Source of the DNA: Dimorphilus gyrociliatus
Taxonomy: Eukaryota > Animalia > Annelida
Length of the DNA stretch: 64,000 bases
Reading direction: 5' to 3'
Assembly: GCA_904063045.1 (NCBI GenBank)
Contig: CAJFCJ010000019.1
Coordinates: 982,570 to 1,046,569 of the forward strand
Shown here: positions 20,741-50,881 of the stretch, piece after piece
How positions within the stretch are numbered: the first letter of the stretch is position 1
Layout: each line of letters opens with the position of its first letter
The notes under the pieces: generated by a model
What the model saw: the letters and a program-made list of their open reading frames with translations, nothing else
The model's database searches: none
Told to the model about the DNA's origin: nothing
Translations under genes and position numbers: made by a program

Positions 20741-23700
20741 ATGGCTAACAATGATAAAACTACTTCAACTATGAACGAAAAGTTAAACTTTCCTACTAGA
20801 AGGAGAAGTTTACTAGAAAGGCTTATACCAAATCGTAAGAGAAGTTTGAGGGCGCAAACATCAAAGAGTTGCGATAATGTTTTCGAGGAAGCTAATCGTG
20901 AAATTTCACAGAACAAAGTAAAACAGAGAAGAGCTACTTCGGATTCGGTTGAAAATCTTCACGTTCAGCCTCGCCCCAGCAGAAAAAGTAGCATCTTTCG
21001 TCATTTTCAGCGTAATGATCATATGGATGTTCACCAAGATATGAACGCTATTCACAGACATTCAGTTACAGTAAGTATTTACTTATGGAAATCTCTCTTT
21101 TTAAATAGAGCGCGTAAAACCCTTACCTGTTTCCCTGAAATGTTGGGTTCCTGTTCCGTTTTCTCAATTGCAGTACGCAAGTCGTACCTGTACACCATAT
21201 CATGCCATACTATCTTACAAAATGGCCGAAAATGTTTATAAAATCGGTCGATTTTCGTTGAGACATCACTTCAAAACGTTTAAAACAACAAATGTAGTTA
21301 GGCGATAGACGGAGATAATTCTCAACTGTTAATCAAAGGTTCATACGCTTCTTTTCAGTACGTCATTTCTTAATAAATTATCCTACGTACCACCCAGTAT
21401 CACTCTATTCTAGCAAGTCACAAATTTCGCCCTAATTTTTCAGATGACCAGCATGTTTGGTACAAAGAAACACGCCGATCTGAAGAAACTTATCACTAAG
21501 CTTAAAGATAGCAGCAAAGGAATATTCGGAAGAATCAAGAGTTTAAGAAACGCCCTATGTTTGTATTTAAACAACTAATACAATTTGTTTAATTAATAGA
21601 TGATCACTTCAGGTGAAGCTGCAGAAGCTGAAGCAAGTGAATTTCTGCGAGAAAATTATTACTTAGTATTTTACTTGATCTCAGATGCTTTTGAACATTT
21701 GGAAAATATCAGTACGAAGACCCACAAGAAAGGAGATGAAGTCGATGTTACAATCGAAATGTTAGAAAGATTAATTATGGAAAATCCTGATCCAATATCA
21801 ATAGGGTGGCAACAAAACGGTATGGGTAGACTAATTAAACGCTTACTTCATCCTAACAATTTGAAGGAAAAAAGAGAAATAGGAATAAAATTATTCCTAG
21901 AGTGGTACTGCATAATGAGAGATTCTTCCTCAAATTTTTGTGATCAAACCTTCCAAGATCTGATTCCCTCCGATTTTAATAACCACAGCCTTAACTTACA
22001 ACATGACTTTATATTTACACCTGGCGAATTTGCTCTAAAAATATCTCCTGCTCCTTTTAATCCCATAGTTGTTAAAAGTCCGAATGAATATTGCGAATCT
22101 CGCGAGTTAATGCGAAAAATGCTGGATTTGATCATCCTAAGTCCGGATTCCATTCGTTGGCCTGAAGCCTCGCATAAATTGAAAGCTCTTAATTTTTTGA
22201 TGAATCGCCTGAAGAAAGTTTACGTAGGGAAACTATTTAAAAATTCGCCATTATGTAGTATTTATAACACAAATCCACCCCCTCACCCAGACAAATCAAC
22301 AATGGTCAATGATCCTATTGACGGGGTACGTGAAGAATTATTACTGTGGTTAGCAAAATACGTGTGTAGGTCTCAAGATATGGCTATAAGCAACGTGAAT
22401 GAAGATCTGATACACCAAGTAATTTTTTCATCTCGTCATTCAGTTGATGTAGTACTCGATCTATTCCGGTATGCCCTCTTATTACCTGCATCATGCTACT
22501 CTATCAAAAAGCAAATTCTATATGTCTACACTAGTTGGTTTTTGACACATCCAAATGGTTCACAGGCTATGCCGCCCATCTTCTTTAATCGTTCTGAAGT
22601 TGAAAAGACTCAAAAAATGTTTGAAAGCCTCCCGTTAGAACCCAATGTAAATAACAAAGATGAGAGAGATTCGTACGTGCCCTTCCAAAGGGCTCTAACT
22701 TGGTACATAATTCATATCGCCGGTATTTTACAACCGTATAAATGCTATTCGGATCTTGAGCAAGAACGACATTTGGAATTGTGTTCATTAGTCATTAATA
22801 ATTATAAACGATTGTCGCAAGAAGTTCGTCTGGAGAGAGAAACATGGCATGAATTGTTATTAGTTTTATTAAGAAGTACTGACATCTTAATGGTGAAAAG
22901 AGATGCGTTCACAAACAACCTTGCTAAACAGCTATTTAGCGTAAGTTCGTTATAATATATTTTATACACGTACTATTACATATTAAAAAAGTAGATGTCA
23001 ACTCCCACTAGTCTGGAGAATACTATATTAAACTTTATTAGTTATAGATTATATCTAATAAATATTCAGTGGGCTCCAAAATAAGATTAAGATAAAGCCA
23101 ACAATTACGTCTAAAGTATTCGCGTAATATGTGCCAAATATTTTACAGATTTATATTATTTATTACAGACACTTTTAACTATTTGGTTAAAAGCTGCTCA
23201 AACTGTCGAGATAGAGAAGGGGCTGTGGAATAGTTTACTCTCGTCCTTAAAGTCCTTAACCAGGTGGAAAGAATTAATTGATGAATGGTCATCTCGTCTA
23301 TTTGACTTGACAAAGGATTTAGCTGTGAAAGTCTACGGAGTAGAACTTCCTGATGGAGACAAGACCAAACACTCTGACAGGATAGCAAGTCGTCAAAATA
23401 ATTCCTTAATAAGTCGAGTAAACACAGAAATTGAAGGCAGAAGCGGATTACCTCCTCAAGAATTTTCGCCACAAAAGGTTAAAGCACAAAAGCTCCTTCA
23501 AAAAGAAAAGCGACAAATATCTGGTGAAGCCACACCTGGTAGTAAATTATCCTTAGACGATGAAGAACCACAGCTATCTAAGTGGCGATCCGATAGTGAC
23601 TTAACAGCTGCAGATGATAATTGTGAAACATTACCTAGGGTAGCTAGCCATACAAGTGTATACGAAGCAGCAAATGCATCTCCTGCCAAAGAAATTCGTG

Positions 23701-26700
23701 CAATAAAATCTCAGGACACAGAATATAGTACTAGTATTATTGGAGGTGAAGGGTTAGAAGGGGCAGTCGTCTTGTGGAGACGATTCGTTGGTATTCTTGG
23801 AAATGTAAATGAAATTGAAGAACCCTATTCGTATGGGGAGATAGTAAGGCAAATTGAGAGAATTATTGGTAAACTTGAATACGTGAGGGATAATATGAAA
23901 TTTGATTGTGACGTCTATCCCCCAATTGCTTGGTTTTCATCTTGGTTGTTTGCTGCTCTTCGTTTGGATGATAGTTATCAAAAGGGTAAACTGACAGCCA
24001 TAAAACTACTCTGTAAATTATTATTGGACGACCCCAAAGCCCGTCATTCTTTATCGTTTATAAGCCGTTTTATTCACACTATTCACACCGTCCTTCATTC
24101 GGGCAATGATGAATTACGTAACATAATTGTCAAAGAATGTTCTTCCAAGATATTGAGTGCCGACGTTGCTGGTGTTTCATTACTATTCTCTCACTTGGCT
24201 CATGCATCTTACTCAGTCTTAGAGAGTAAAGATTTAAACCAACCACGTAAAGAAGCAGTTTCACTTTTATTTGGTCTTCTAAATGTGCATGATGATTCCC
24301 TACCATCTTTAGATCCACGTTGCCTAAGTCCTGCTTTAGTCGAATGCAAAAACCTAAAAGAGGATATTATACAGAAGTTAATTTATTATTCTAAAACTGA
24401 GCAGTCTGAGGATGCAAGAATTGTCGCATTGAACTCAATTTCATCGTTCACTTATAAAGAACTTAGTATTTGTTCACAGGATCGCTTTCCTCATCCAGTT
24501 GTGAAAGATAACATACACGTCCTACTAGCAACCGTTCACTCTGAAAAGCTGAAACAAAAATCCATTAGTAGGGTGGCATGTGACCTTCTGGTTATGCTGG
24601 CCGAAAAAGTAGATAAAATCTTAACGTTTGTTGCGGACATTCCTGGAAGAGTGATTGAAAGTCTCGTTCATACTCTTTGCACTCTACTAAGTAAACCTGA
24701 TGAGAAGTTGACCGTGGGGGTGATGTTAACTTGCTTAGAATGGGTCATGAGATGCCCTTTACCACTGTTATTAGATAACGGAGCGGGAGCCTATAAGTGC
24801 TTCTTACAAAAGGTATTCAGTGCCTTGGAGCAGGCCTCTTCTGGAGATATTCAACCAAGACCAGATGAGCCATCTATCGTTTATGAAACCATTGAAGATG
24901 TATACAGTAGCACGAAGTTTAACGATGATAATCAATTTAGCATTAAACTCGCCGCTGATGCCGTAATAAACAGCTTAATAAATCTTCTTGGCGTTTGGCC
25001 TATGGGTGGTGGAGCTGCCCTTTTGCACAGTCATGTAAACGAGGCTCATGATAACGTTAGTGATCTGAGCGGTGAATTTACCTCATCTATCTTAAATGCA
25101 AGCAACCTTCAATGGCTGGTCTCTAATGGAGGGTCTGTAATATCTGCAATTCAATTGCCACAACATTTGTCAAACGGTGGTGGGACAGGGGGATTAGTTA
25201 GGGCAGAAAATCAAGCGAGATTCTTAATTAGAAATTTTATTGGAAAGTATTGCTGGGACGCAACATTCGTTTACGGAATGGGCAACTGTCGTTCGGGGTC
25301 ATATACCTATTCGAATGAAGATGTGAAGCCATTGTCTAATAAGGCGCTAACTTATCTGACAAAAAGTGATGCCTTTGCAAACAAGTTCAATGAACTGGAT
25401 TCTTTTTTATTGTATATTGAAGAATCTAGTCCGGAATGTAGGCTAAAACCGGGCCAACCCCTTGATTCTCCATATCCCTTGCCCTCGTACTTCGGAAGCG
25501 AAGCAATTGCTAACGCTACGAAAAGTTTGACTAGTCAGCAAGCAGCAGAGAATGAACGTACATGGACTAACAGAAACAATCCAAGTGTAGTGGCTAAAAG
25601 AGCCGACGCCCAAGAAGTAGGACCAAGAACAAAATTTGAAGTCGAATGGCCTTTTTGTATAACAAGATTATTCCTCTGGCATTTGGGTTTGGGACCGATT
25701 GAAAAAAGGCAAAGTCTCGATATCCTTGAACAAGGCGACCCCTTAATAAGACATTTGAAAAACATCGATAAGCAGTTGTGCAGGGAAACACATAAGGTTG
25801 GATTACTTTATGCAGCCTCTGGCCAAAAGACCAAAGCGGAAATGCTCGACAATGATGCAGGTTCAAGATTATTTGAAGATACTGTCTCAGGCCTTGGTTG
25901 GGATGTTGAATTATCATCTCATCCTGGCTTTACAGGAGGACTTTCACGTAACAAGTGTACAACAACTTATTATGCCTCTTCTTGGCAAGAATTAGTCTGG
26001 CATGTTAGTACGCGGATGGAGAGCGGCAGTGATGAAAAACGCCATCTAAAATTAAAACATCTAGGAAATGACGAAGTACTTGTCGTGTTTGTCGAAAAGG
26101 GAGCAAATTTTTCCAGGAGCACCCTAAGAACGGATTTTGCTGACGTTCTAATTATCATAAAACCGGCTCCGTCAACCAGACTTTCGACAAAAGCTGTCTC
26201 TGTTACTATCGACACAAAAAAGAGTAACATGCATGTTGGTCCCTTATATAATGGGGCCATTGTAGAGATTAGATGCTTGCCTCAGCTCTTAAGAGCAACC
26301 GTCCTTAACGCTTCTAGGAAGCTTCGATTTTTACTGCCTCATTTTAAGCAATTCTATGAGGAAAGATCTCACTACGTGAAGATGCTTGTTGAAGAGAAAA
26401 GACGAAGGTGCACTTTTGAAGATTTTGCGGAAGCGCTTTTTGCTCCGGTCTTGCCTTCTAGTCAGTTTTATTATTGATAATCAAACTCTTTTATAATCAA
26501 TAGTCAATAACGTAATTCTCCTTCAATTGTTTACAGTATCAGTGCCATACCTGCATAAGCGTAACAGTCCTGCAGTAGAAAATAGCGACCACAATGCTGA
26601 GAGTGAGTTGTGTATTGATCATTTTTGATTTTAAAGTAAATTCTAATTGCTTTCACAAAGGTCGAGAGACTATGTTTACTTGGCATGGTCAAAACCTAAG

Positions 26701-32069: not shown

Positions 32070-33525
32070 ACAATTTGCCCGTGGTTACGAGTTCCGATCA
32101 ATTTCTTTAAGGTATACTCCATTACGGAATACATGACAACTAATTGAAATATTGTATTCGAAAAGAGAAAAGAAAGCAAAGACCAAACGAAAACTCAGCT
32201 TGAAAGATTAATTATATGTAATAATGGATAATTTATAAGCAAAATATGAGATTTTCTTTAATGATCATATTTCAAGCTATTTTTATATTGAAAATTTGGC
32301 GAAGGTGCCTGGAAAGAGAACTAAATTAGCTAGAATGTTTTCATCCGTAAGAAAAAAAATACCATTAAAGTAAATCCACTTCGTTAGACAGTATAGAAAG
32401 ATAACACCAAAATAAGACGGGTAAGCTTTGGAATGGGAAAAGAACTTTTTGTTGGAAATCATTGAAGCTCAACCTTATTTAATCATATCATACTCAGAAA
32501 TAGAAGGGAAGAGATTGAAAATATCCTTCGATAGGAAAAACAAGCTAAATTCTAAGACGTACCAATTCTATACGAAAGAGGGTAGACTGTAAAGGCGCCC
32601 AAATATTCTAAAAGGAGCTCTTAAATCGCGCTTAGTACTTTTATCGAACAATAATGCTGTAAAGATCTGATTGTTCCAGAAAGTATACAAACTTACGGAA
32701 CGTAATGGAATCAAAGTATTACTGTTAATGTGTTATTATCTAAAATGCATGTATCACGAAAAGCTGCTGGCAGGTTAGTTCATTACATTAAGAAAAAAGG
32801 AAATGGTATAATTTCCCTGTCTCTACAGATGTCCTTTACAATTAATTGTTAAGTATGGAGAAATCTATTGGGCTTTCGGATAATATTGTTCAAGGTTAAA
32901 ATTTAATTGAATAGGGCACATTTTAAGAAAATGCAAAAGATAAGGAAAAGCTTGTTAGCCAGAATACATCAAATAGGGAAAACAAGCATTTGAGCGTAAA
33001 AGCTTAGAGAATTAATTATGTTAATTATTTTTTAAAGAAATAACCAAAATCGTCTAAGAAGAATAATGTGAAAAGAAATTTATTTATAAGATGAAAGCTT
33101 CAAGACTGAAAAATTTCTGGAAGCAAAAGACGACGTTTCTTTCTACTTTGCTTTATATTTACAATAAAGAGCGTGTCTGTAGCATCTTTCCTTTGGATTA
33201 CTTTTTTCTCACTGTTAATGATGATATACTTACTGAATTATCTTTGTAGTTTTATGCTTTGAAATTTTCTTTCGTTTTGTTTTTTGCCCAGTGTTTTTTT
33301 TGTTACTATGCATAATATTAATTCGTGTAAATTGCACATATGTTCTCCCAAGGTGAAATGTTTGAAGAAAACTAATTTCAAATTTTACGCGGGCTTCTCA
33401 AGTATTTACTGGGATACGAACTCCTCGTATTAATAATGACACCAGGTGAAATAGATCAAACGGTCGCCTGTTTTCTCACATTTACTAAGTTATCTAAGTT
33501 CAAGTTCACACATACTATAAAAGAA

Positions 33526-34612
33526 ATGCTCTTTCTTCTCTTCCTTGCCGGTTTCATCGCCTTTCTTGCAGTTTTTCTATTTGCAGATGCCGATTTGTTG
33601 ACTCTATATTATGAGAGATTTGGATTAAAAGCTGGTAAGGGAATAGGGTCTTGTTTACGTATTGTGCTCTTTAATTGATTTCATTCTGAAATTTATTTAT
33701 TATTTAGACTCATTAAGGGGAAAGGTCATTTGGATAACTGGAGCATCGAGTGGAATAGGGGAATATACTGCTTATGAGTTATCCAAAGTGAATTGTTCAC
33801 TTATCTTATCTGCACGTCGAAAGAGCGAATTGGAAAGAGTAGCGTCAAAATGTAGAACTCTCGGCCCAGTGGATGTTGTAGTGCTACCGTTGGACGTGAC
33901 CGATGCAACGAGTCAGAAGAATTGCTTCGATAAAATTATCGAACAATTCGGGCGAATAGATGTACTATATAATAACGCGGGCCGTTCCCAGCAAGCCGAC
34001 GCCCTTAAAACTGAGTTAAAAGCCGATCACGACATTTTCGACATTAATTTTATATATTGCATAAGTCTCGCTAAAATTGTTCTTAATCACATGAAGGAAA
34101 TCGGTAGCGGTCAAGTTGCCTTTACTTCCAGTATTGCGGGTAAATTAGGTTCGCCCCGTCAAGCCATGTATTGCGCCACTAAACACGCATTGCACGGTTG
34201 GGTAGCTGCCACCCGTTTCGAATTAGGTGAAACAGATATTATACTCCAGCTACTATGTCCTGGACCAGTTGTCTCTGATATAAGAAAATGTTCCTTTACG
34301 GAAGTTTCGGGAAAAGAATTTGGTGGGGAAGATCCCAACGCTAAAAAGAAGATGTCCACTGAAAGATGTGCTAAGCTAATGGTAGTGGCAGTTGCAAATA
34401 AAATAGGCGAGAGTTGGATAACAAAACAACCAATCCTCCTAGTGACTTATATTGGACAGTATATACCAGTCCTTTTCGCATGGTAGCAGCCCTTAATTAA
34501 GTCTTTAAGTTTCCTCTTTTTAAACCTTCCTCTTTTTTTTCCTTAATGCAGGATGGCAAGAACGCTGTCGGGTAAAGTTGTGCAAAGGTTACGTTACGGT
34601 AAAAAGGACTAA
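33526..34612 (+). CDS. DHRS7: Short-chain dehydrogenase/reductase, DHRS7-like; exons 33526-33634, 33708-34482, 34552-34612
   Basis: N-terminal hydrophobic anchor followed by ADADLLTL, TGASSGIG cofactor motif, NNAG, catalytic YCATK, CPGPV; introns are phase-consistent. Confidence 0.85.
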
Positions 34613-35759
34613 GACGATTAACCTTTCTATCTTATACTTTTACTACGAACAATGAAAGTTATTAGACATGAAAGGTAAAAAAAAGCAAAATTGATATAAA
34701 ACTACCCTTTCAGTTGATGGAGAGGGAAATAAATGAAATTATTCCACTTGTAAAAGTTATTATGATTACTCAGAGAAGAGAAACGGGGAGAAGAATGCTA
34801 GAAAACATATTTTGTTTAATATTCATAGCAAATCGCTATTGGAAAATGATTCTGAAATGAAACAATTCCGTCTTAAGAAAAAACAAACATTCTTTTTCCA
34901 CAAAAGTGAATCCCCGTCAATCGGTAGTTTTGTCTAATATATATATAATCACCTGTTTCTCTATTATCAAAATTCTTTTTATCCTCTTTACTCCTTTCCC
35001 CTGTTAGTTCTAACATAAGCTTTAACGGTGTCCAGAAAAATCAGCCTATGATGACGTAATATAAAATTTTCTTTAGCATTACTAATCTACTTCGCATTCG
35101 TTAAATTATTATCTAGAAATAAAATAATCTTCAGTTTTTTCTCATTCTTTTCGAAGGTAAACAAAAGATTTTTTTTTCTTTATGTCTAATCAAACTAGTT
35201 TACTTATCTATAAGATTGCATGGTTGTTACCTATATTCGACAAAATCAAAATATTAACTTTAGTCCCAAATATAGGCTGACTATGACTAAGAACAATACA
35301 GATTAGTCATACTTTCTTACGCAATAATTAGGTGTAGAGTCGCAGATTAGAAAGTGTATGAGATACTTAAAAAATCTTGAATAGAATAAAGGTAAAAAAT
35401 AGAAAAAAAAGAAAAAAGAAAAAACGATGATAGATTTAAGTTGTTAGCGGTAATTTGCTAATAGCTTCGTAAATACCCTGGAAACGGTACCGTATACGCT
35501 TCATTAAATTCGGTAGAAGTTCTTTGTAAAAAATCTATCCATTCAAGTGACTCGCGTGATGACGAGATTTTTTTTTATCTCGGATTACCTTACAACATAA
35601 TAACCCGCAGTCAATAATATAATTCTATAATAAGTGGAGCGTTAAGACTAAAGACGGAAGAGGGAGGAAGAAAGAATGGAAGTTGGGGAACATGCGCAAA
35701 ATTTATATTGTACATTTCGCGGGTAATGTTTGATAAAAAAAAACTAGACACGATTGCTG

Positions 35760-35794
35760 ATTGGCTGCTGTCAATACAAAACGGTCATATAAAA
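35760..35794 (+). promoter_or_regulatory. Candidate core promoter of the 72-aa ORF: inverted CCAAT (35760-35764) and TATAAAA (35788-35794)
   Basis: Both motifs are visible about 110-150 nt upstream of ATG 35907, which has A at -3. Function is inferred. Confidence 0.45.
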
Positions 35795-35906
35795 GCCCAA
35801 TCAGGTCGAGTTATATAGCAAATTAGTTAGTGTCGATATATTTTCACCTTCGTTCAAAAAATAAACTTTTTATATATTTATCATACTCAAAAAATAAAGC
35901 AAGAGA

Positions 35907-36125
35907 ATGAATAACGCTGACGACCGAATATACCACGCTGTAATAATCAAAAAGGACGAGGAACTCGTTAAAGTTGCCGCCAGTTTAAGGGGCATTGCCG
36001 ATACCTTTGAAGAGCAATTTAAGAGGAGGAGGACGTCGGCCACAACCTCTGCCACTGCCTTGTGCGTAATAGGTAGAATGATCCCCCTAATCTACCGTTT
36101 TTACCAGGATTATCTTCTCAGCTGA
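35907..36125 (+). CDS. Putative BH3-only pro-apoptotic microprotein (72 aa, single coding exon)
   Basis: VAASLRGIADTFEEQFKRRR fits the BH3 consensus (hydrophobic-x3-L-x2-hydrophobic-[G/A]-D-x-hydrophobic). It aligns without gaps to the recalled PUMA BH3 IGAQLRRMADDLNAQYERRR. Hydrophobic C-terminal tail and upstream TATA box. Confidence 0.6.
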   Translation: MNNADDRIYHAVIIKKDEELVKVAASLRGIADTFEEQFKRRRTSATTSATALCVIGRMIPLIYRFYQDYLLS

Positions 36126-36692
36126 TCAGCCTTTACATGAAGTATTCCTTAATGTATAATAAGACAGCAGTTATTTTTTTTTCAAGGTGAGATTGTTTTT
36201 AACGTTCTTTGTTCTTTTTTTTATTTATATATTCGAATATGATTATTATTTTCAAAACCTAGAGAATAATTAGGTTACTGCTTATCTGTCTTTAATTTTC
36301 TCAGTTCATTAATTAAATTTCAGATCTCAAAACGCTTTAAGAAACAATCAACTTTTGAGCTGATGATTCTGTTGTGTACATTACACACATGCGCATAAAC
36401 AGTACACGGTTGATGATTAGATCATCATGTATACATATATATACATGATATACTTATATATATATACATATATATATATCTTTTATTTTTATTATTCATT
36501 AAATATTTTAATAAGATATTATTAATTATTTATTTTATATATATCAACATGCAATTATACATTTGTATAAGTAATCGCTTAAAAATGACTGCTTTCTCAC
36601 CATTTTTTTATATCTTTTTTTCTTAACTTGTTAATTGTTTTTTTTCTAAAGAATGTTTTGTATATTTTGCTTTTGTATATTTCTTTTATTAT

Positions 36693-37606
36693 NNNNNNNN
36701 NNNNNNNNNNNNNNNNNNNNNNNNNNNNNNNNNNNNNNNNNNNNNNNNNNNNNNNNNNNNNNNNNNNNNNNNNNNNNNNNNNNNNNNNNNNNNNNNNNNN
36801 NNNNNNNNNNNNNNNNNNNNNNNNNNNNNNNNNNNNNNNNNNNNNNNNNNNNNNNNNNNNNNNNNNNNNNNNNNNNNNNNNNNNNNNNNNNNNNNNNNNN
36901 NNNNNNNNNNNNNNNNNNNNNNNNNNNNNNNNNNNNNNNNNNNNNNNNNNNNNNNNNNNNNNNNNNNNNNNNNNNNNNNNNNNNNNNNNNNNNNNNNNNN
37001 NNNNNNNNNNNNNNNNNNNNNNNNNNNNNNNNNNNNNNNNNNNNNNNNNNNNNNNNNNNNNNNNNNNNNNNNNNNNNNNNNNNNNNNNNNNNNNNNNNNN
37101 NNNNNNNNNNNNNNNNNNNNNNNNNNNNNNNNNNNNNNNNNNNNNNNNNNNNNNNNNNNNNNNNNNNNNNNNNNNNNNNNNNNNNNNNNNNNNNNNNNNN
37201 NNNNNNNNNNNNNNNNNNNNNNNNNNNNNNNNNNNNNNNNNNNNNNNNNNNNNNNNNNNNNNNNNNNNNNNNNNNNNNNNNNNNNNNNNNNNNNNNNNNN
37301 NNNNNNNNNNNNNNNNNNNNNNNNNNNNNNNNNNNNNNNNNNNNNNNNNNNNNNNNNNNNNNNNNNNNNNNNNNNNNNNNNNNNNNNNNNNNNNNNNNNN
37401 NNNNNNNNNNNNNNNNNNNNNNNNNNNNNNNNNNNNNNNNNNNNNNNNNNNNNNNNNNNNNNNNNNNNNNNNNNNNNNNNNNNNNNNNNNNNNNNNNNNN
37501 NNNNNNNNNNNNNNNNNNNNNNNNNNNNNNNNNNNNNNNNNNNNNNNNNNNNNNNNNNNNNNNNNNNNNNNNNNNNNNNNNNNNNNNNNNNNNNNNNNNN
37601 NNNNNN
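36693..37606. other. Assembly gap (914 N)
   Basis: Run of N; the ORFs spanning it are artefacts. Confidence 0.99.
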
Positions 37607-37773: not shown

Positions 37774-39139
37774 TCAAATGTGCTTGAGTAGTTCGACTGC
37801 AAGACTGCAACTTAAGCCTGTTCCATCCGATTCAACTAGCAGCTTTTTTACAACACCATCTTGGATATACATTGCGTAGCGCTTAGATCGAACGTTTCCA
37901 AGCACGTTCGTCAGATCCAATTGCATATCAATCGCCTTCGTAAACTCTCCATCCGCATCGGCGAACATCCTTATCTAACGACGGGTAAAGAATAAGATTT
38001 ATATAAACCGTTTTTACGTTAAAATTAAATGCAGAACAATAATTTTTTTTTTTCTATAAAAGATGTTTGTCTCACTCACAAACTTACCTTACCATCGGCT
38101 CCTTGGTGTTTACCCCAAGCATCCATGACAAAAGCATCGTTTACGGATAAGCAGGCGATAGTCGTGATTCCTTTCTCTATAAATTTAGAGTAATTTTCGA
38201 CATAACCGGGTAAGTGTTTCTGCAAAGGTTGATGGGAAGTTAGTATTTAGAATTAATATCTTATTTTGAAATACTAGCGCTAATAATAATAAGAAATCTT
38301 TTATAGATTAAGGAATCGGAAGCTACAAAATTAACATTTAACCCGGTGAATAAAAAAAAAAAAAACAAAGGGAGAAAATGCTTCATATCTCTTTTTGATT
38401 GTTGTTTTTTTTAAAAAGAAATCTGAGCTGCCCAAAAAAAAAGCATTGGAAAATACAAGCGATCGAATAGGCGAGATTAGAAGTATATATTATTATCACA
38501 TTGAATAATATGAATATTATAAATAAATATATATATATCAATAAGAATTGTATGTTATTTTTTTTCTTTACTTTAAATAAAAGCTATTATTATTTTTTTA
38601 ATAATAATTCTTAACTATCGATTTTATTGTTTACCTCCGGTGAGATGGAATGAGATAAGAATTTACGTCTCTGAAATTAGTAAGTACTTTGTGCTATAAT
38701 AAAACGAACTAAAAGGAAATTCTATAATTCATATTTTTTTTTCTATTTTTATTATATTATTAATAAATCAGGTTAAATAACTTTTGTCTAATCAAATAAA
38801 AATGATAATGAAATTTTTACTATATAAAAATTATTTATTGTTTTCATACTAATATTTCTTTATAAAGATTAAAAAGTAATATTTTTTTTTTTTTTAAAAA
38901 TCTCTATATATATTAAATATTTACTGTATTACAGTAGTCTATTAAATAGGCTGTATTTATAAATATAGTTGAGTACTCACCTTATCGCATCCAGGCGTAA
39001 AGGCACCTGGGACGGCAAATAGGACGCCCTTTCCTTTTGCAAATACCTCACCAATATAAAATTTCGAGCCCGGTTCGCCTTCAGACACTTCTAAATTGGG
39101 TAGTTTATCACCTTCCTGTAACGTTTGTTGTTTTTGCAT
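37774..39139 (-). CDS. PRDX5: Peroxiredoxin-5 (atypical 2-Cys); core exons 39139-38981, about 38220-38089, and about 37974-37774
   Basis: VPGAFTPGC (peroxidatic Cys), KHLPGYV, ACLSVNDAFVMDAWG, RSKRYAM, DGTGLSCSLA (resolving Cys); phase-0 GT-AG introns. Confidence 0.95.
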
Positions 39140-40314: not shown

Positions 40315-42123
40315 ATGACTGAAATTCGAGCAATCCCACTGGGAGCAGGGCAGGATGTAGGTAGATCATGCATCCTAATCGAAATTGGGGGAAAAAATAT
40401 CATGCTTGATTGCGGCATGCATATGGGCTATAACGATGATCGCCGATTTCCAGATTTTTCGTTTATTCGAAAATCTGGCGATCTAACTCCTTATTTAGAT
40501 TGCGTTATTATCAGTCACTTTCACCTCGATCATTGCGGTGCTTTACCCTACATGACTGAAATGGTCGGGTACAACGGACCTATTTATATGACTCATCCAA
40601 CCAAAGCCGTCTGTCCTATTCTTCTTGAAGACTACAGAAAGCTAACAGTGGAAAAAAAGGGCGAACAAAACTTTTTTACATCTGAAATGATAAAAAAGTG
40701 TATGTCGAAATGCGTCGCCGTTAATCTTCATCAGACGATTCAGGTAGATAGTGAACTAAGAATAAAACCCTATTACGCCGGTCACGTTCTGGGTGCTGCA
40801 ATGTTCCATGTTGAAGTGAAAAATCAATCGCTCGTCTACACGGGCGATTATAATATGACGCCGGATAGACATTTGGGAGCCGCCAGTATCGATAAATGCC
40901 GTCCGGATTTACTTATTACTGAGTCGACTTATGCTACAACTATTCGAGATTCTAAACGATGTAGGGAAAGGGATTTTCTCCAAAAGGTCCACGAATGCGT
41001 GGAGAGAGACGGAAAAGTTCTAATTCCAGTTTTTGCGCTTGGAAGAGCTCAGGAGTTATGCATATTACTTGAAACTTATTGGGAGAGAATGAATTTAAAA
41101 GTTCCTATATATTTTGCGGTTGGTCTCACGGAAAAAGCCAATAACTATTATAAAATGTTTATAACTTGGACTAATCAAAAGATTAAGCAGACATTTCTCG
41201 AAAGGAATATGTTCGAATTCAAACATATCCGTGCTTTTGATCGAAGTTTTATAGAAAATCCTGGATCTATGGTGGTGCTAGCTACGCCTGGTATGTTACA
41301 TAGTGGATTGTCGTTACAAATCTTTAAAAAATGGGCCCCTTTCGAAAAGAATATGGTCATTATGCCTGGATACTGTGTCCAAGGTACTGTTGGATTTAAA
41401 ATATTGAGTGGTCAGAGAAAATTAGATATAGACGGCCATCCTTTAGAAGTAAAAATGTCGGTTCAATATATGTCCTTCAGTGCGCACGCCGATGCCAAAG
41501 GTATAATGCAACTAATTGGGATGTGCGAGCCAAAAAACGTTATGCTAGTTCACGGAGAGGGTGGAAAAATGCAGTTTCTCAAAGCCAAGATCGAAAGAGA
41601 ATATGGTACGTCTTGTTATATGCCAGCCAATGGGGAGATGGCAATTATCGACACAAAGACTAATATGGAAGCTAATATTTCTATACCTCTTTTGAAACGA
41701 ACATTGGCTGTTGGAAATACAAAAAATGACATTCCTGAACCTAAAAAATGCAGGACATTACATGCAGCTGTCGTAATGAATAATAATAAATTAACTATTG
41801 TGGACACTGACGAAACGGTGAATAATGTATTAAATAAAAATCTCCATCATATTCAGTATTCTACCTGCCTGCCTATCCCAGCGAAAGAAAGTGCAAAAAG
41901 CCTGTTTGATTTATTAACGGACGTGCTACAAGATGTAGTTGTTACCCACTCTGCTGACGGTACAATAAGCGTCGACGATGTTGACATTCATATAGAGCAA
42001 GAGGATGAAAGTTGTAAAAAAGCAATGATCAGTTGGCAACACGAAGATGAACAATTAGGTAGTTTTGTATGTAAACTTATTAAACAACACTGCAAAAGCA
42101 TAACAAATGAGGAAGAAAACTAA
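40315..42123 (+). CDS. INTS11: Integrator complex subunit 11 (CPSF3L), MBL/beta-CASP endonuclease, intronless
   Basis: [29 protein letters not shown] metal motif, [23 protein letters not shown] and SFSAHAD; these match INTS11 rather than CPSF73 as recalled. Confidence 0.96.
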
Positions 42124-42734: not shown

Positions 42735-43697
42735 ATGGCTGGCGAGACGAGAAACCTTTATTTGTCATCTGTTGAACAGAAAACTGACAGCTTTAATAGT
42801 AGTTTCTATTCGGATAAAGATTGGAGAATTCTACAACCTATATGGGACTTACGTTTTGGCTATGAGAATGTCTTGTCATCGCCTGTATTTCCTCCGATAC
42901 TTTGCACATTATTCTATGTTATTTATTGTAGCATTTATACAATAATTGATCTCTACTTCGTAAACTTTAAAATCATCAAACGCTATAAAATTCAACCGGA
43001 TAGGGCTCCAAACGCTAAAGGTATTGAAAGAGCTGTATTGTTGACGCTATGGAATAATATGGTATGGACCTTACCAATTACAATGGCTCAGTGGGCTTTT
43101 ACGCCGAACGAAGTTCTGCCGAAAGTTGCTCCAACTCTATTCGAATTTATATGGCAGCATTTTGCCGCCTTGGCTATGTTCGATTTCTTCTACTTTACTT
43201 GGCACTCAATTCATCACAAAGTTCGCTTTCTGTACAAGCATTGCCACGCAGTTCATCACGAATATTACGTGTGCAACTCCTGGGTTACTCAATATCTACA
43301 CCCCTGGGAGCTGATATGCGTCGGATTTTTCACCTATTCTTCCGTTATGATCTTTAATCCGCATCCTATGACAAAATGGTCTTATCTACTGTTTTCAGAA
43401 ATAATCTCTATAGATGAGCATTCGGGTTATGATTTTCCGTTTATGCTAAGCAACATCTTTAAGATAATGGGAGGAGCCGTAAAACACGATATGCATCATA
43501 TGAGACCTCTGACAAATTATGCTCCATTCTATCTCTATTGGGATTGGATCTTCGGCACAAATTGTCCTGGAGTAAGGGCAGGAGGTTATAGGGATCAGGC
43601 AATGTTAGAATACGAGAGGAAACGAAAGGAACGGATTTCAAATATGAAAGGAAAACAGAAGCATAAATTCTCCTGGTGGTACAAATATATTAACTAG
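42735..43697 (+). CDS. Fatty acid hydroxylase/sterol desaturase family protein, cholesterol 25-hydroxylase-like, intronless
   Basis: Three His boxes (HSIHH, HAVHH, HDMHH), DEHSGYDFP, NYAPFYLYWDWIFGT, TQYLHPWEL. Confidence 0.82.
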   Translation: MAGETRNLYLSSVEQKTDSFNSSFYSDKDWRILQPIWDLRFGYENVLSSPVFPPILCTLFYVIYCSIYTIIDLYFVNFKIIKRYKIQPDRAPNAKGIERAVLLTLWNNMVWTLPITMAQWAFTPNEVLPKVAPTLFEFIWQHFAALAMFDFFYFTWHSIHHKVRFLYKHCHAVHHEYYVCNSWVTQYLHPWELICVGFFTYSSVMIFNPHPMTKWSYLLFSEIISIDEHSGYDFPFMLSNIFKIMGGAVKHDMHHMRPLTNYAPFYLYWDWIFGTNCPGVRAGGYRDQAMLEYERKRKERISNMKGKQKHKFSWWYKYIN

Positions 43698-48800: not shown

Positions 48801-50022
48801 ATGCGCTAAAGGCTGTAAAACGTGTCTGGATAAAACTCCGTGCCTATTGCAGTTAAACTGGGTACATCGGTCAGTGTTGCTTGGTATCAGCTGCGTCCTA
48901 ATGGCAGCTATTCCACTCCTCGTCGTTTTTACATACAAGTATAGCGACGTAAAAGTAAGTCGATTCATTTCGTTCAATAAATAGATACATATTGCTCTTT
49001 TTTCTCATCACTTATTTTATACATATTTATATGCAATATGTTTGCGTCCATATATTTTTTCTCTCTTTTATTTAATACATAATCCATATGTCGTTACAGG
49101 TGCTGAAAGCTGCCAGTCCAGTTCTTTTAAGAATTATTCTCCTTGGTGCCTTTCTCCTATATTGCCCGGTATATATCTCTTGAGAAATCAACCAAAATCT
49201 TAACCACTCTTTCATGTTCCTTATTATCATTACCGTAATCGGTTTCTTCTTCAATCAATTTCTACTTTCCGTAACCTCATTTGGTTTCCTAAACCTCTGG
49301 TTTATCGGTTAATCGGTCTTTATCTTTCAATTGGAAACATTGATTCGAGCACAATTCGCTATCATTCAAAAAATCTATTTATCCTCTATCTCTATCTTTA
49401 TCAAGCCATATCAATCTCTCTCATTCTCCCTGCCTCTCGCTCTCTTATTTTTTTTTTCTTACCAATCTTTTTTATTCTCAAATGTTTTTTTTTCATTATA
49501 CTAATGGTCTGTTATTCAACAGATGATAGTGCAATACTTTGAACCTACCCAAGTGTCCTGCTGCCTGCGCGTTTGGATGAGAGAAATAGGTTTCTCAATA
49601 TCCTACGGAGCACTTCTGCTAAAAACCTGGAGGATTTCAGTCGTCTTTCGCGTTCGTTCCGCTCAACGGGTGAAGATTAGCGATACGGATTTAATCAAAC
49701 GCCTATTATTTATAGTCCTACTCTTTTCGGTTTATCTAACCGTACGAATGGTAATTGGCCGGCCCAAGGTTATGAAAGGTATGTCCCATCATACTTTTAT
49801 GTTCGTCAATCGTGATGTCATGTTGATTAATCGAACGTGATGGTTTTCGGTTAGTGGTACAACTACAAACGAAATGAAAGAGCTTTGTATTCTTCCCTTA
49901 TTATCTGTGAATCTAATTACTCTTAAATATCTCAGCATTAAACCCTCTCGCCTCATCGTTTATTTATAGTTTTCTCTATTGCCAATAGTTTTTGCGCCGG
50001 CTTCTTAATGTACGCGTATGAA

Positions 50023-50062
<40 letters not shown>

Positions 50063-50881
50063 CTTTATACTGCAAATATATGTAATATCTTCTCGATTTC
50101 AGCTACTCATTCCAGTAAGAAACACGCTTACCAATGCTCTTGGGATACTTGGGATTATTGCGCGGCAGTAGCCGAATTGTGCTTATTGTTGTGGGGAATA
50201 AGATTGTGTATAGTTGTAAGGAAAGCTCCATCGGAATTTAACGAAAGTCGCTTTATCAGTTGGGCGATCTATAATGAAACCTTACTGTCTCTCTTCCTCA
50301 ATATTACCATGTTCTTCCTGCAAAGTATAGCTAATCCGGACTTATTGTACTTAGTCTTATTTATACATACGCAATTGACAACTACAGTCTTACTTGGTTT
50401 CCTTTTTGGAAGTAAAGCTTATCTTGTTTATAAATATCGAGGCAAATCAGAACAAGCTGCTACAACCATTAATCGAGGATCAAAGTATGTCGCCGCACCA
50501 AAATCAAACTATAGCGTTCAAATGACGTCAGTTGCAACTTCGGGTAACGTGTCAAATATGACGGGAACGGCCGAAGGGGAAATGCAGGAAGAGGATATAC
50601 AATGCACACCTAGGTCACCTGAGAGCGTTTTACAAACTTCAATGAGTGGCGGAGGTGGAAACGGGGGGACGTTGGCGAAAGACATAGAAGAAGAGTTCAA
50701 GAGACTCTACACTCAATTAGAGACACTAAAGCAAAAGAATATGAAGTTGGGAAATCCACACTTGTCTGTTAAATTGTCTGCAATGACGGAAGCAGCCTGC
50801 AGTTGTCCTCCCAGTCCATCGGAAAATGGGAGGAAAGTTATAATCAGCTTAGATAAAATTGAAGAAAGCACTCATTTGTGA
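45848..50881 (+). CDS. GPR158: Class C GPCR, GPR158/GPR179-like (Cache ectodomain, Cys-rich/EGF-like linker, 7TM, C-terminal coiled coil); 7 exons starting at about 45848, 47547, 48346, 48610, 49101, 49523 and 50103
   Basis: WGLPYFDCGGGDIWMMTYTVPFFG, GTSGIDIDLQKVDIDQC, GLGFSRGSYHCVCKEGYYFP, LLLKTWRI, APSEFNESRFISWAIYNE, EEFKRLYTQLETLKQKNMKLGNPHL. Confidence 0.88.

What the first reader, a model, noticed from the sequence alone, without database searches (positions are those of the whole stretch)
35907..36125. Unannotated-looking 72-aa BH3-only (PUMA/Noxa/EGL-1-like) microprotein
Seen: an intact single-exon ORF with A at -3. Residues 23-42 (35973-36032, VAASLRGIADTFEEQFKRRR) align without gaps to the recalled human PUMA BH3 (IGAQLRRMADDLNAQYERRR), 9 of 20 identical. 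The invariant Leu and Asp are kept, hydrophobic residues occupy h1-h4, and an aromatic residue precedes the RRR run. A hydrophobic tail (ALCVIGRMIPLIYRFY) follows, and CCAAT/TATA motifs lie upstream. Established: BH3-only proteins are short, share little beyond this motif, often carry C-terminal membrane-targeting tails, and are easily missed by homology-based annotation. Inference: this is a lineage-specific apoptosis trigger in an invertebrate group where BH3-only sensors are poorly catalogued.
Basis: partly seen in the sequence, partly recalled or inferred. Interest (0 to 1): 0.8.

Follow-up and report, generated by a model that had tools for sequence, protein, structure and literature searches.

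The report
Unannotated worm BH3-only-like microprotein gene
The miniature marine worm Dimorphilus gyrociliatus has a real, transcribed and conserved but unannotated 72-residue gene whose best-conserved part looks like the short "death helix" (BH3 motif) that triggers cell suicide in other animals, though its killing function has not been tested.

Summary
The 72-codon ORF at 35907-36125 (+) is intact and carries a textbook BH3 pattern (V23, L27, I30, A31-D32, F34).

The genome is the annelid Dimorphilus gyrociliatus: the neighbouring DHRS7 exon is 100% identical to DgyrCDS11517.

The ORF is a real gene.
- RNA-derived contigs from three runs, at least two of them different species, cover it.
- They show two GT..AG introns, both outside the coding sequence.
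- An in-frame stop in the upstream exon excludes a longer protein.
- A diverged relative (DHRS7 dS about 1.1) keeps the 72-aa ORF at 88% identity.
- dN/dS is 0.12 in this frame and 0.28-3.8 in the other five.
- Constraint sits in the BH3 helix (0 non-synonymous, 6 synonymous changes) and the C-terminal helix.

No protein with this sequence is on record, and an exhaustive HMMER search of 1.84 billion representatives found only that relative.

Support for a BH3 reading is motif-level only:
- PUMA and Bim BH3 peptides are three of the top four PDB hits, in register (E 0.7-1.1).
- The nearest protein-language-model neighbours are BH3 peptide and BH3-only clusters, at sub-threshold scores.
- No Pfam BH3-only family matches.

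Binding and killing are untested.

Verdict: a new, lineage-restricted candidate BH3-only protein, with moderate interest. The scan has noted a different BH3-only candidate elsewhere in this genome.

The parts
35428..35486 (+). Putative non-coding 5' exon. The start is approximate, and a possible 6-codon uORF begins at 35427.
   Evidence: The X3 metatranscriptome contig joins 35467-35485/6 directly to 35899/35900. RNA contigs and the conserved block both begin at about 35425-35428. The in-frame TAA at 35470-35472 closes the reading frame upstream.
35487..35899 (+). Intron 1 (GT..AG, 413 nt), retained or bypassed in some contigs. It is highly conserved and contains a promoter-like CCAAT/TATA cluster.
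   Evidence: The joint is in the X3 contig with a 19-20 nt anchor. GT at 35487-88 and AG at 35898-99 are both conserved in L002. Nucleotide identity is 85-94%, against 26-70% in flanking intergenic DNA. The genome's median intron is 66 bp, and regulatory introns are larger (PMC7854359).
35760..35801 (+). Inverted CCAAT (35760-35764), TATAAAAG (35788-35795) and CCAAT (35797-35801): a candidate proximal promoter 106-147 nt upstream of the ATG.
   Evidence: Read directly from the sequence. All three motifs lie in stretches identical in the relative. Use as a promoter is not shown, because contigs cannot give transcript starts.
35900..36184 (+). Exon 2, carrying the whole coding sequence.
   Evidence: The X9 contig covers 35428-36184 and is joined to 36322. 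The X4 contig covers 35909-36179 with a spliced loose end. The X3 contig covers 35899-36057.
35907..36125 (+). Coding sequence of the 72-aa protein, including the TGA stop.
   Evidence: dN/dS is 0.12 in this frame against 0.28-3.8 in the other five. Fisher p is 1e-7 for excess synonymous change.
35973..36008 (+). BH3 core, V23-F34 (HP1 V23, HP2 L27, HP3 I30, A31, D32, HP4 F34).
   Evidence: using the hotspot definition in PMC9171138. It aligns in register with PUMA and Bim BH3 peptides.
35955..36041 (+). Residues 17-45, the invariant block around the BH3 helix, including the basic R40-R42 run and T43-S44.
   Evidence: There are 0 non-synonymous and 6 synonymous differences from the relative, Fisher p 5e-5. 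AlphaFold2 predicts a helix at residues 3-40, with its highest pLDDT over 21-40. The hydrophobic moment peaks at residues 22-39.
36039..36113 (+). Second predicted helix, residues 45-69. Its hydrophobic, amphipathic core is A51-Y66 (36057-36104).
   Evidence: AlphaFold2 predicts a helix at 45-69. The hydrophobic moment is 0.5-0.57 and the Kyte-Doolittle 19-residue mean is 1.31. Over residues 51-72 there are 6 synonymous and 1 non-synonymous change, p 3e-4.
36185..36321 (+). Intron 2 (GT..AG, 137 nt) in the 3' untranslated region, starting 59 nt after the stop codon.
   Evidence: The joint 36184>36322 is in the X9 contig. The same junction appears as a loose end in X4, a different species. Donor and acceptor are conserved in the relative.
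36322..36409 (+). Exon 3, 3' untranslated region. The end is not determined.
   Evidence: The X9 contig reaches 36409. Conservation continues to about 36420.

Best explanation
This is a real, unannotated three-exon gene of the annelid Dimorphilus gyrociliatus. Its middle exon encodes a 72-residue protein built of two conserved helices.

The first is an amphipathic helix carrying a complete canonical BH3 motif: V23, L27, I30, A31-D32 and F34, followed by F38 and an RRR-T-S run. The second is a C-terminal amphipathic, hydrophobic helix.

The most likely mechanism is that of a small Noxa-, PUMA- or Bim-type BH3-only protein. The C-terminal helix would hold it at an organelle membrane, probably the mitochondrial outer membrane. 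The BH3 helix would insert its four hydrophobic residues into the groove of a Bcl-2-fold protein, and D32 would pair with the conserved BH1 arginine. This would neutralise pro-survival Bcl-2 proteins or activate Bax/Bak-type proteins.

Shown here: the gene, its transcription and splicing, purifying selection focused on the two helices, and the motif. Inferred: translation (from dN/dS), membrane association, Bcl-2 binding and pro-death activity.
For: Organism: the DHRS7 exon is 100% identical to DgyrCDS11517 of D. gyrociliatus.

Transcription and gene model:
- RNA-derived contigs cover the ORF. X9 is shown to be RNA because the two DHRS7 introns are removed in it.
- Two GT..AG introns set the strand.
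- The in-frame upstream stop and the stop inside exon 2 rule out a longer protein.

Conservation:
- A relative with DHRS7 dS 1.10 and 80% amino-acid identity keeps this ORF at 72 aa and 88% identity.
- dN/dS is 0.12, comparable to DHRS7 (0.107) and PRDX5 (0.14), and it is frame-specific.
- Residues 17-45 show 0 non-synonymous against 6 synonymous changes (p 5e-5). The tail shows 1 against 6 (p 3e-4). The N-terminus is not distinguishable from neutral.

BH3 reading:
- The motif fits the HP1-HP4 plus acidic hotspot definition (PMC9171138).
- The regex expectation is 1.7e-4 per 72-aa protein.
- PUMA (2roc_B, 2vof_B) and Bim (1pq1_B) BH3 peptides are three of the top four PDB hits for residues 17-45, gapless and in register.
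- The nearest ESM-Atlas neighbours of the whole protein include PXT1, Noxa, Bim, BMF and BIK clusters. For residues 15-45 the top hit is a cluster of 26-aa BH3 peptides (0.82), and 8 of the 10 best named hits share its family or clan.
- AlphaFold2 predicts two helices, at 3-40 and 45-69.
- The motif resembles the Hydra HyBH3-only-2 peptide, which binds HyBcl-2-4 (PMC7489894).
- Annelids are reported to have BAX, BAK, BOK and several anti-apoptotic BCL-2-like genes (bioRxiv 10.1101/2023.12.11.571055).
Against: - No Pfam BH3-only family matches at E up to 1.
- The PDB hits have E 0.7-1.1. The single best PDB hit is not a BH3 peptide but the calmodulin-binding NR1 C1 peptide (E 0.27).
- Atlas scores are 0.76-0.85, below the tool's 0.9 lead threshold.
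- All the BH3 evidence derives from the same roughly 20 residues. The literature warns that BH3 patterns have little predictive value (PMC9171138).
- The tail falls short of a classical transmembrane segment.
- No p53 response element was found.
- There are no homologues beyond one close relative, so there is no deep conservation of the motif.
- Bcl-2 partners in this genome were not verified here.
- There is no ribosome-profiling, proteomic or induction evidence.
Confidence: 0.55

Rival explanations
1. It is a real, conserved microprotein with a different function. One possibility is a membrane-associated helix-linker-helix regulator whose basic amphipathic helix binds another partner such as calmodulin, or carries an RXR-type retention signal switched by phosphorylation. 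On this reading the BH3-like pattern is a coincidence of amphipathic-helix composition.
For: The best PDB hit for residues 17-45 is the calmodulin-binding NMDA-receptor NR1 C1 peptide, which shares the F..(S/Q)FKRRR(S/T)S stretch (E 0.27). No BH3-only Pfam family matches. BH3-like motifs are known to give many false positives (PMC9171138). AlphaFold2 predicts two helices that could pack as a hairpin.
Against: The full five-hotspot BH3 pattern with correct spacing is expected in only 1.7e-4 of 72-aa proteins. Three of the top four PDB hits and most named Atlas neighbours are BH3 ligands. The NR1 hit is itself non-significant and lacks the Leu-x4-Asp pair. Small size plus a C-terminal hydrophobic helix is the typical architecture of Noxa, Bim and Hrk (Wilfling 2012, as cited in PMC9171138).
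Confidence: 0.36
2. The transcript is non-coding or regulatory. On this reading the ORF is not translated and its conservation reflects DNA- or RNA-level constraint on a strongly conserved promoter or UTR block.
For: The whole block 35425-36130 is unusually conserved (85-94%), including about 480 nt of non-coding sequence upstream. Synonymous divergence in the ORF (dS 0.49) is lower than in DHRS7 (1.10). There is no ribosome or peptide evidence.
Against: Substitutions inside the ORF fall overwhelmingly on synonymous sites of this one frame: 17.5 synonymous against 9.5 non-synonymous, ratio 0.12, p 1e-7. Four of the other five frames give ratios of 1.0-3.8. The fifth, the antisense frame that shares third-codon positions with the ORF, gives 0.28. 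ORF length and both ends are preserved exactly. Rfam finds nothing.
Confidence: 0.06
3. The ORF is one exon of a larger, unrelated protein.
For: An upstream exon is spliced to a site only 7 nt before the ATG, with no stop between that acceptor and the ATG.
Against: Reading the spliced form upstream meets TAA at 35470-35472 with no ATG in between. The TGA stop lies 59 nt before the next donor, inside exon 2. The exhaustive search, which has no length limit, found no longer protein containing this sequence.
Confidence: 0.02

Closest known systems
PUMA/BBC3 BH3 region (peptides in PDB 2roc_B and 2vof_B)
   Same: It aligns without gaps over 21 residues in BH3 register. Shared positions are Leu at HP2, Ile at HP3, the Ala-Asp pair, Gln, and the Arg-Arg after an aromatic residue.
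   Different: E is only 0.7-1.1 and the Pfam PUMA model does not hit. By my recollection PUMA is about 190 residues and largely disordered, and has homologues across vertebrates. This protein is 72 residues and is found in one annelid lineage only.
Noxa/PMAIP1 and Bim/BCL2L11
   Same: All are small proteins built of a BH3 helix plus a C-terminal hydrophobic or basic membrane-targeting segment. They are among the nearest named Atlas clusters, and the Bim peptide 1pq1_B aligns in register.
   Different: There is no detectable homology. The tail here has two Arg and a Pro and is weakly hydrophobic. Neither the dynein-light-chain motif of Bim nor a p53-type promoter element was seen.
Hydra vulgaris HyBH3-only-2
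   Same: It is an invertebrate BH3-only protein whose 26-mer peptide binds HyBcl-2-4 with nanomolar affinity. Its core, I-G-A-C-L-R-A-I-G-D-D-I, shares 5 of 12 residues and all hotspot classes with V-A-A-S-L-R-G-I-A-D-T-F (PMC7489894).
   Different: It comes from a different phylum, shows no similarity outside the motif, and has been functionally validated, which this ORF has not.
BAD/BIM-like BH3-only candidate of the same genome (scan note s1-080352)
   Same: It is a second small, apparently unannotated BH3-only candidate on the same scaffold, about 1.5 Mb away.
   Different: It is described as a three-coding-exon gene of a family shared with molluscs, nemerteans and hemichordates. The present ORF has no relatives outside its own lineage. 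I did not see that gene's sequence.
NMDA receptor NR1 C1 calmodulin-binding peptide (PDB 2hqw_B)
   Same: It is the best single PDB hit (E 0.27): a basic amphipathic helix ending in FKRRR followed by Ser/Thr.
   Different: The hit is non-significant, the peptide lacks the Leu-x4-Asp BH3 pair, and it is a segment of a large receptor rather than a microprotein.

Membership tests
BH3-only proteins (functional class, polyphyletic) | BH3 motif: four hydrophobic hotspots HP1-HP4 on one helix face, with an acidic residue between HP3 and HP4 preceded by a small residue (PMC9171138) | tested here: met
   V23, L27, I30, A31-D32 and F34 have canonical spacing. The hydrophobic residues fall at 220-340 degrees on the helical wheel, and the hydrophobic moment peaks at residues 22-39.
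BH3-only proteins (functional class, polyphyletic) | No other BH motifs and no Bcl-2 fold | tested here: met
   The protein has 72 residues, no Pfam hit including Bcl-2, and only two helices in the AlphaFold2 model.
BH3-only proteins (functional class, polyphyletic) | BH3-dependent binding to the groove of a Bcl-2-fold protein | not testable with these tools
   No multimer prediction or binding assay is available. Bcl-2 partners in this genome are known to me only from a scan note (s1-080695) and from the annelid literature.
BH3-only proteins (functional class, polyphyletic) | Pro-apoptotic activity abolished by mutating the HP2 Leu or the Asp | not testable with these tools
   This needs an experiment.
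BH3-only proteins (functional class, polyphyletic) | C-terminal membrane anchor (present in many members, not all) | tested here: inconclusive
   A conserved helix is predicted at residues 45-69. However, the Kyte-Doolittle 19-residue mean is 1.31, below the usual 1.6, and the helix is amphipathic with R57, P60 and R64.
Named BH3-only families (PUMA PF15826, Noxa PF15150, Bim PF06773/PF08945, BMF PF15185, BIK PF12201, and BAD and EGL-1, whose Pfam accessions I did not look up) | Significant sequence match to the family profile | tested here: not met
   hmmscan against all of Pfam-A gave no family at E up to 1. Exhaustive phmmer found only the close relative P0001. PDB peptide hits have E 0.7-1.1.
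Protein-coding gene | Transcribed, spliced and under frame-specific purifying selection | tested here: met

The most novel reading that the evidence does not exclude
The gene is a young, Dinophiliformia-restricted BH3-only killer. It would have arisen de novo or by convergence, not by descent from any vertebrate BH3-only family. That would be a clean example of how BH3 ligands are repeatedly invented as microproteins. It would also give an inducible trigger for the Bcl-2 pathway in an animal group reported to lack APAF-1.

A less likely variant is that it is a drastically shortened descendant of an ancestral BAD-like gene linked to PRDX5. BAD and PRDX5 share a locus in human (PMC6283835). The 'D-x-F-x-x-x-F-K-basic' stretch recalls BAD, but that comparison rests on my memory only.
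Probability: 0.2. Interest if true: 0.7.

Novelty: new member of a known kind. Interest (0 to 1): 0.5.

Why it matters
BH3-only proteins set off mitochondrial cell death, but they are short and share almost nothing beyond one motif. They are therefore poorly catalogued outside vertebrates, C. elegans, schistosomes and Hydra.

Reviews state that they are only "potentially present" in Lophotrochozoa (PMC8998228). The authors of the Acropora apoptosis study called characterising the BH3-only repertoire important but challenging (PMC4715348).

This is a concrete, expressed, selectively constrained 72-residue candidate in a tractable annelid with a 74-Mb genome. It makes the question directly testable: synthesise one peptide and measure its binding to the worm's Bcl-2 proteins. 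It also shows that genuine small genes are missing from the published annotation.

Tried and rejected
- Cnidarian origin. Run labels said 'coral metagenome', but the DHRS7 exon is 100% identical to a D. gyrociliatus protein. The coral metatranscriptomes presumably contain the worm as a co-inhabitant.
- Pfam scan: nothing for the ORF.
- Word-based and exhaustive protein searches. Only the relative P0001 is a real hit. P0002 (5,185 aa, 16 stretches) and P0003 (242 aa, 3 stretches) are internal-repeat proteins whose scores add up from repeated weak matches. BLASTP gives E 0.004 or no alignment, so I rejected them as homologues.
- Whole-ORF PDB search: only chance hits to fucoxanthin-chlorophyll proteins through the tail (E 0.26).
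- Exact-sequence look-ups of the ORF, an 860-aa neighbouring ORF and DgyrCDS11517: none on record.
- p53 response element scan of 35300-36420 and of the relative: no full site, and one half-site with one mismatch at 35688.
- Rfam on 34500-36690: nothing credible.
- Synteny in other annelids. Downstream of DHRS7 lies a PP1-inhibitor gene in Capitella and a Kunitz gene in Owenia. Neither locus has a BH3-motif ORF or a tblastn match.
- Microsynteny with human 11q13. Apart from PRDX5, the window's neighbours are RALGAPB-like, INTS11, a fatty-acid hydroxylase and a class C GPCR, none of which appears in the human BAD-PRDX5 locus gene list (PMC6283835).
- Supplement of PMC8998228: it holds no BH3-only candidate sequences.
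- Fold search: not run, because a two-helix model at pLDDT 66 would give meaningless matches.

Full report
**Observation**

Positions 35907-36125 on the + strand encode 72 residues, with an A at -3. Residues 23-34 read V-A-A-S-L-R-G-I-A-D-T-F.

That is the canonical BH3 arrangement: four hydrophobic hotspots (V23, L27, I30, F34), and a small residue plus an acidic residue (A31-D32) between the third and fourth. This matches the definition in PMC9171138.

The quoted tail (A51-Y66) and the upstream CCAAT and TATA motifs (35760-35764, 35788-35795, 35797-35801) are also present.

ORF length alone is weak evidence, since 40 ATG-ORFs of 72 aa or more occur in this 33.5% GC window.

**Organism**

Run labels suggested a coral, but the adjacent DHRS7 exon is 100% identical to DgyrCDS11517 of the annelid Dimorphilus gyrociliatus. 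Earlier scan notes say the same. The short DHRS7 introns (73 and 69 nt) fit that genome's 66-bp median (PMC7854359).

**Is it a gene?**

Contigs from public runs were laid on 33000-36690. Run X9 matches the window perfectly. It is RNA-derived, because both DHRS7 introns are cleanly removed in it.

- The X9 contig covers 35428-36184 and then jumps to 36322-36409. This removes a GT..AG intron of 137 nt that starts 59 nt after the stop codon.
- Run X4 is 90-95% alike, so a different species. It has a contig over 35909-36179 whose loose end reads straight into the sequence at 36322, which is the same splice.
- A coral metatranscriptome contig (X3) is 99% or more alike. It joins 35467-35485/6 directly to 35899/35900, which implies a second GT..AG intron (35487-35899) ending 7 nt before the ATG.

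Both introns fix the transcript to the + strand. Read through that splice, the frame meets TAA at 35470-35472 with no ATG in between. The protein therefore starts at 35907 in either isoform and ends inside exon 2. The 'exon of a larger protein' alternative is excluded.

Contigs cannot give transcript starts. I therefore cannot say whether the conserved TATA/CCAAT cluster inside intron 1 is a second promoter.

**Conservation**

A Logan contig (L001) and a 7.5-kb contig (L002) come from another species. L002 spans DHRS7, the ORF and PRDX5 in the same order. This species is well diverged:

| Segment | Amino-acid identity | dS | dN/dS |
|---|---|---|---|
| DHRS7 exon | 80% | 1.10 | 0.107 |
| PRDX5 last exon | 91% | 0.34 | 0.14 |
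| The ORF | 88% | 0.49 | 0.12 |

Neighbouring intergenic DNA is only 26-70% alignable.

The ORF keeps its exact length and both ends. It shows 17.5 synonymous against 9.5 non-synonymous differences (Fisher p 1e-7). Four of the other five reading frames of the same alignment give ratios of 1.0-3.8. The fifth, the antisense frame that shares third-codon positions with the ORF, gives 0.28.

The constraint is modular:

| Region | Synonymous | Non-synonymous | Fisher p |
|---|---|---|---|
| Residues 17-45 (BH3 helix and basic run) | 6 | 0 | 5e-5 |
| Residues 51-72 (tail) | 6 | 1 | 3e-4 |
| Residues 1-16 | 2.5 | 4.5 | 0.6, not distinguishable from neutral |

Residues 46-50, the linker between the two helices, show 3 synonymous and 4 non-synonymous changes and were not tested separately. 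This is the signature of a translated protein whose function lies in two helices.

**Annotation status and relatives**

No protein with this sequence is in the 5.8-billion-cluster collection, although other D. gyrociliatus proteins are. No gene call with this product is on record.

An exhaustive HMMER pass over 1.84 billion representatives found only the close relative. The two other 'hits' are internal-repeat proteins with summed weak matches, and I reject them.

Capitella and Owenia have different genes next to DHRS7 and no similar ORF. The gene therefore looks restricted to the Dimorphilus lineage. Small ORFs are often not called, so absence elsewhere is not proven.

**Is it a BH3-only protein?**

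For:
- The motif is complete.
- A medium-strict pattern is expected in 1.7e-4 of 72-aa proteins. It hits nowhere else in the window's six frames.
- With residues 17-45 as query against all PDB chains, three of the four best hits are BH3 peptides solved in complex with Bcl-2 proteins. These are PUMA (2roc_B, 2vof_B) and Bim (1pq1_B), gapless and in register.
- Protein-language-model neighbours of the whole protein include PXT1, Noxa, Bim, BMF and BIK clusters. For residues 15-45 alone the top neighbour is a cluster of 26-aa BH3 peptides, and 8 of the 10 best named hits share its family or clan.
- AlphaFold2 predicts two helices, at 3-40 and 45-69, with mean pLDDT 66.
- The first helix has its hydrophobic residues on one face.
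- The core resembles the validated Hydra HyBH3-only-2 peptide (PMC7489894).

Against:
- All of this comes from the same roughly 20 residues.
- The individual E-values (0.7-1.1) and Atlas scores (0.76-0.85) are sub-threshold.
- The top PDB hit is a calmodulin-binding peptide (E 0.27).
- No Pfam BH3-only model matches.
- The tail is amphipathic and not clearly membrane-spanning.
- No p53 element was found.
- The field itself warns that BH3 patterns predict poorly.
- I could not verify the worm's Bcl-2 partners myself. I have only a scan note of a CARD-Bcl-2 fusion and a preprint reporting that annelids have BAX, BAK, BOK and several anti-apoptotic BCL-2-like genes.

**Verdict**

The gene is real with about 0.93 confidence. 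It has the architecture and motif of a small Noxa-, PUMA- or Bim-style BH3-only protein, and I put BH3-type function at about 0.55. The main rival, at about 0.36, is a conserved microprotein with another partner.

It is not a member of any named BH3-only family by homology. It would be a new, lineage-restricted member of the polyphyletic BH3-only class. The scan has already noted a different, BAD/BIM-like candidate 1.5 Mb away on the same scaffold, so this would be a second BH3-only candidate in the genome.

Interest is moderate. The claim is cheaply testable and bears on whether annelids use the three-part Bcl-2 switch, but for now it rests on a motif.

Noticed in passing
window 35425-35900: About 480 nt of non-coding sequence upstream of the ATG is 85-94% identical to the relative species. 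That is more conserved than the DHRS7 coding exon (79%), and neighbouring intergenic DNA is only 26-70% alignable. The block covers the 5' exon and the 413-nt first intron. It holds CCAAT and TATA motifs, a TTTCGCGGG element that looks E2F-like, and TGACTCGCGTGATGACGAG. It is probably a dense regulatory region.
   Followed up: partly
window 35427-35447: A six-codon upstream ORF (ATG ... TAG) lies at the start of the conserved 5' exon and is identical in the relative. Whether the transcript start lies upstream of it is unknown, because contigs break at the A-rich repeat 35393-35427.
   Followed up: no
window 34551-35344: In the relative species (run X1) the DHRS7 transcript contig runs on to about 35344. 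This implies a 3' UTR of roughly 750 nt that ends about 80 nt before the start of the microprotein gene's conserved block.
   Followed up: no
window 36693-37606: A 914-N assembly gap lies between the microprotein gene and the last PRDX5 exon. Contig L002 from the relative spans the equivalent interval (L002 4671-6755) and holds only AT-rich, low-complexity sequence with no convincing ORF.
   Followed up: partly
window 36024-36038 (R40-S44): The invariant R-R-R-T-S run directly after the BH3 helix fits a basophilic-kinase (R-R-x-S/T) site. It resembles the RRR-S-S retention and phosphorylation switch of the NMDA receptor NR1 C1 peptide, the best PDB hit (E 0.27). It is a possible phospho-regulation site, which is inference only.
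   Followed up: no
window 36125-36184: The stop codon lies 59 nt upstream of a spliced exon junction. In some animals this arrangement marks an mRNA for nonsense-mediated decay, which could keep basal levels low. This is speculative.
   Followed up: no
window 37777-39139 (-) and human 11q13: The ORF sits next to PRDX5. In human, BAD and PRDX5 are listed in one locus (PMC6283835). A BAD-like candidate is noted 1.5 Mb away on this scaffold. The other neighbours here (RALGAPB-like 21600-26477, INTS11 40315-42123, a fatty-acid hydroxylase 42735-43697, a class C GPCR 50018-50881) do not support microsynteny.
   Followed up: partly
runs X3, X5-X8: Coral metatranscriptome runs contain near-identical D. 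gyrociliatus transcripts (99% or more in X3). The worm evidently lives on or among sampled corals or in their aquaria.
   Followed up: no
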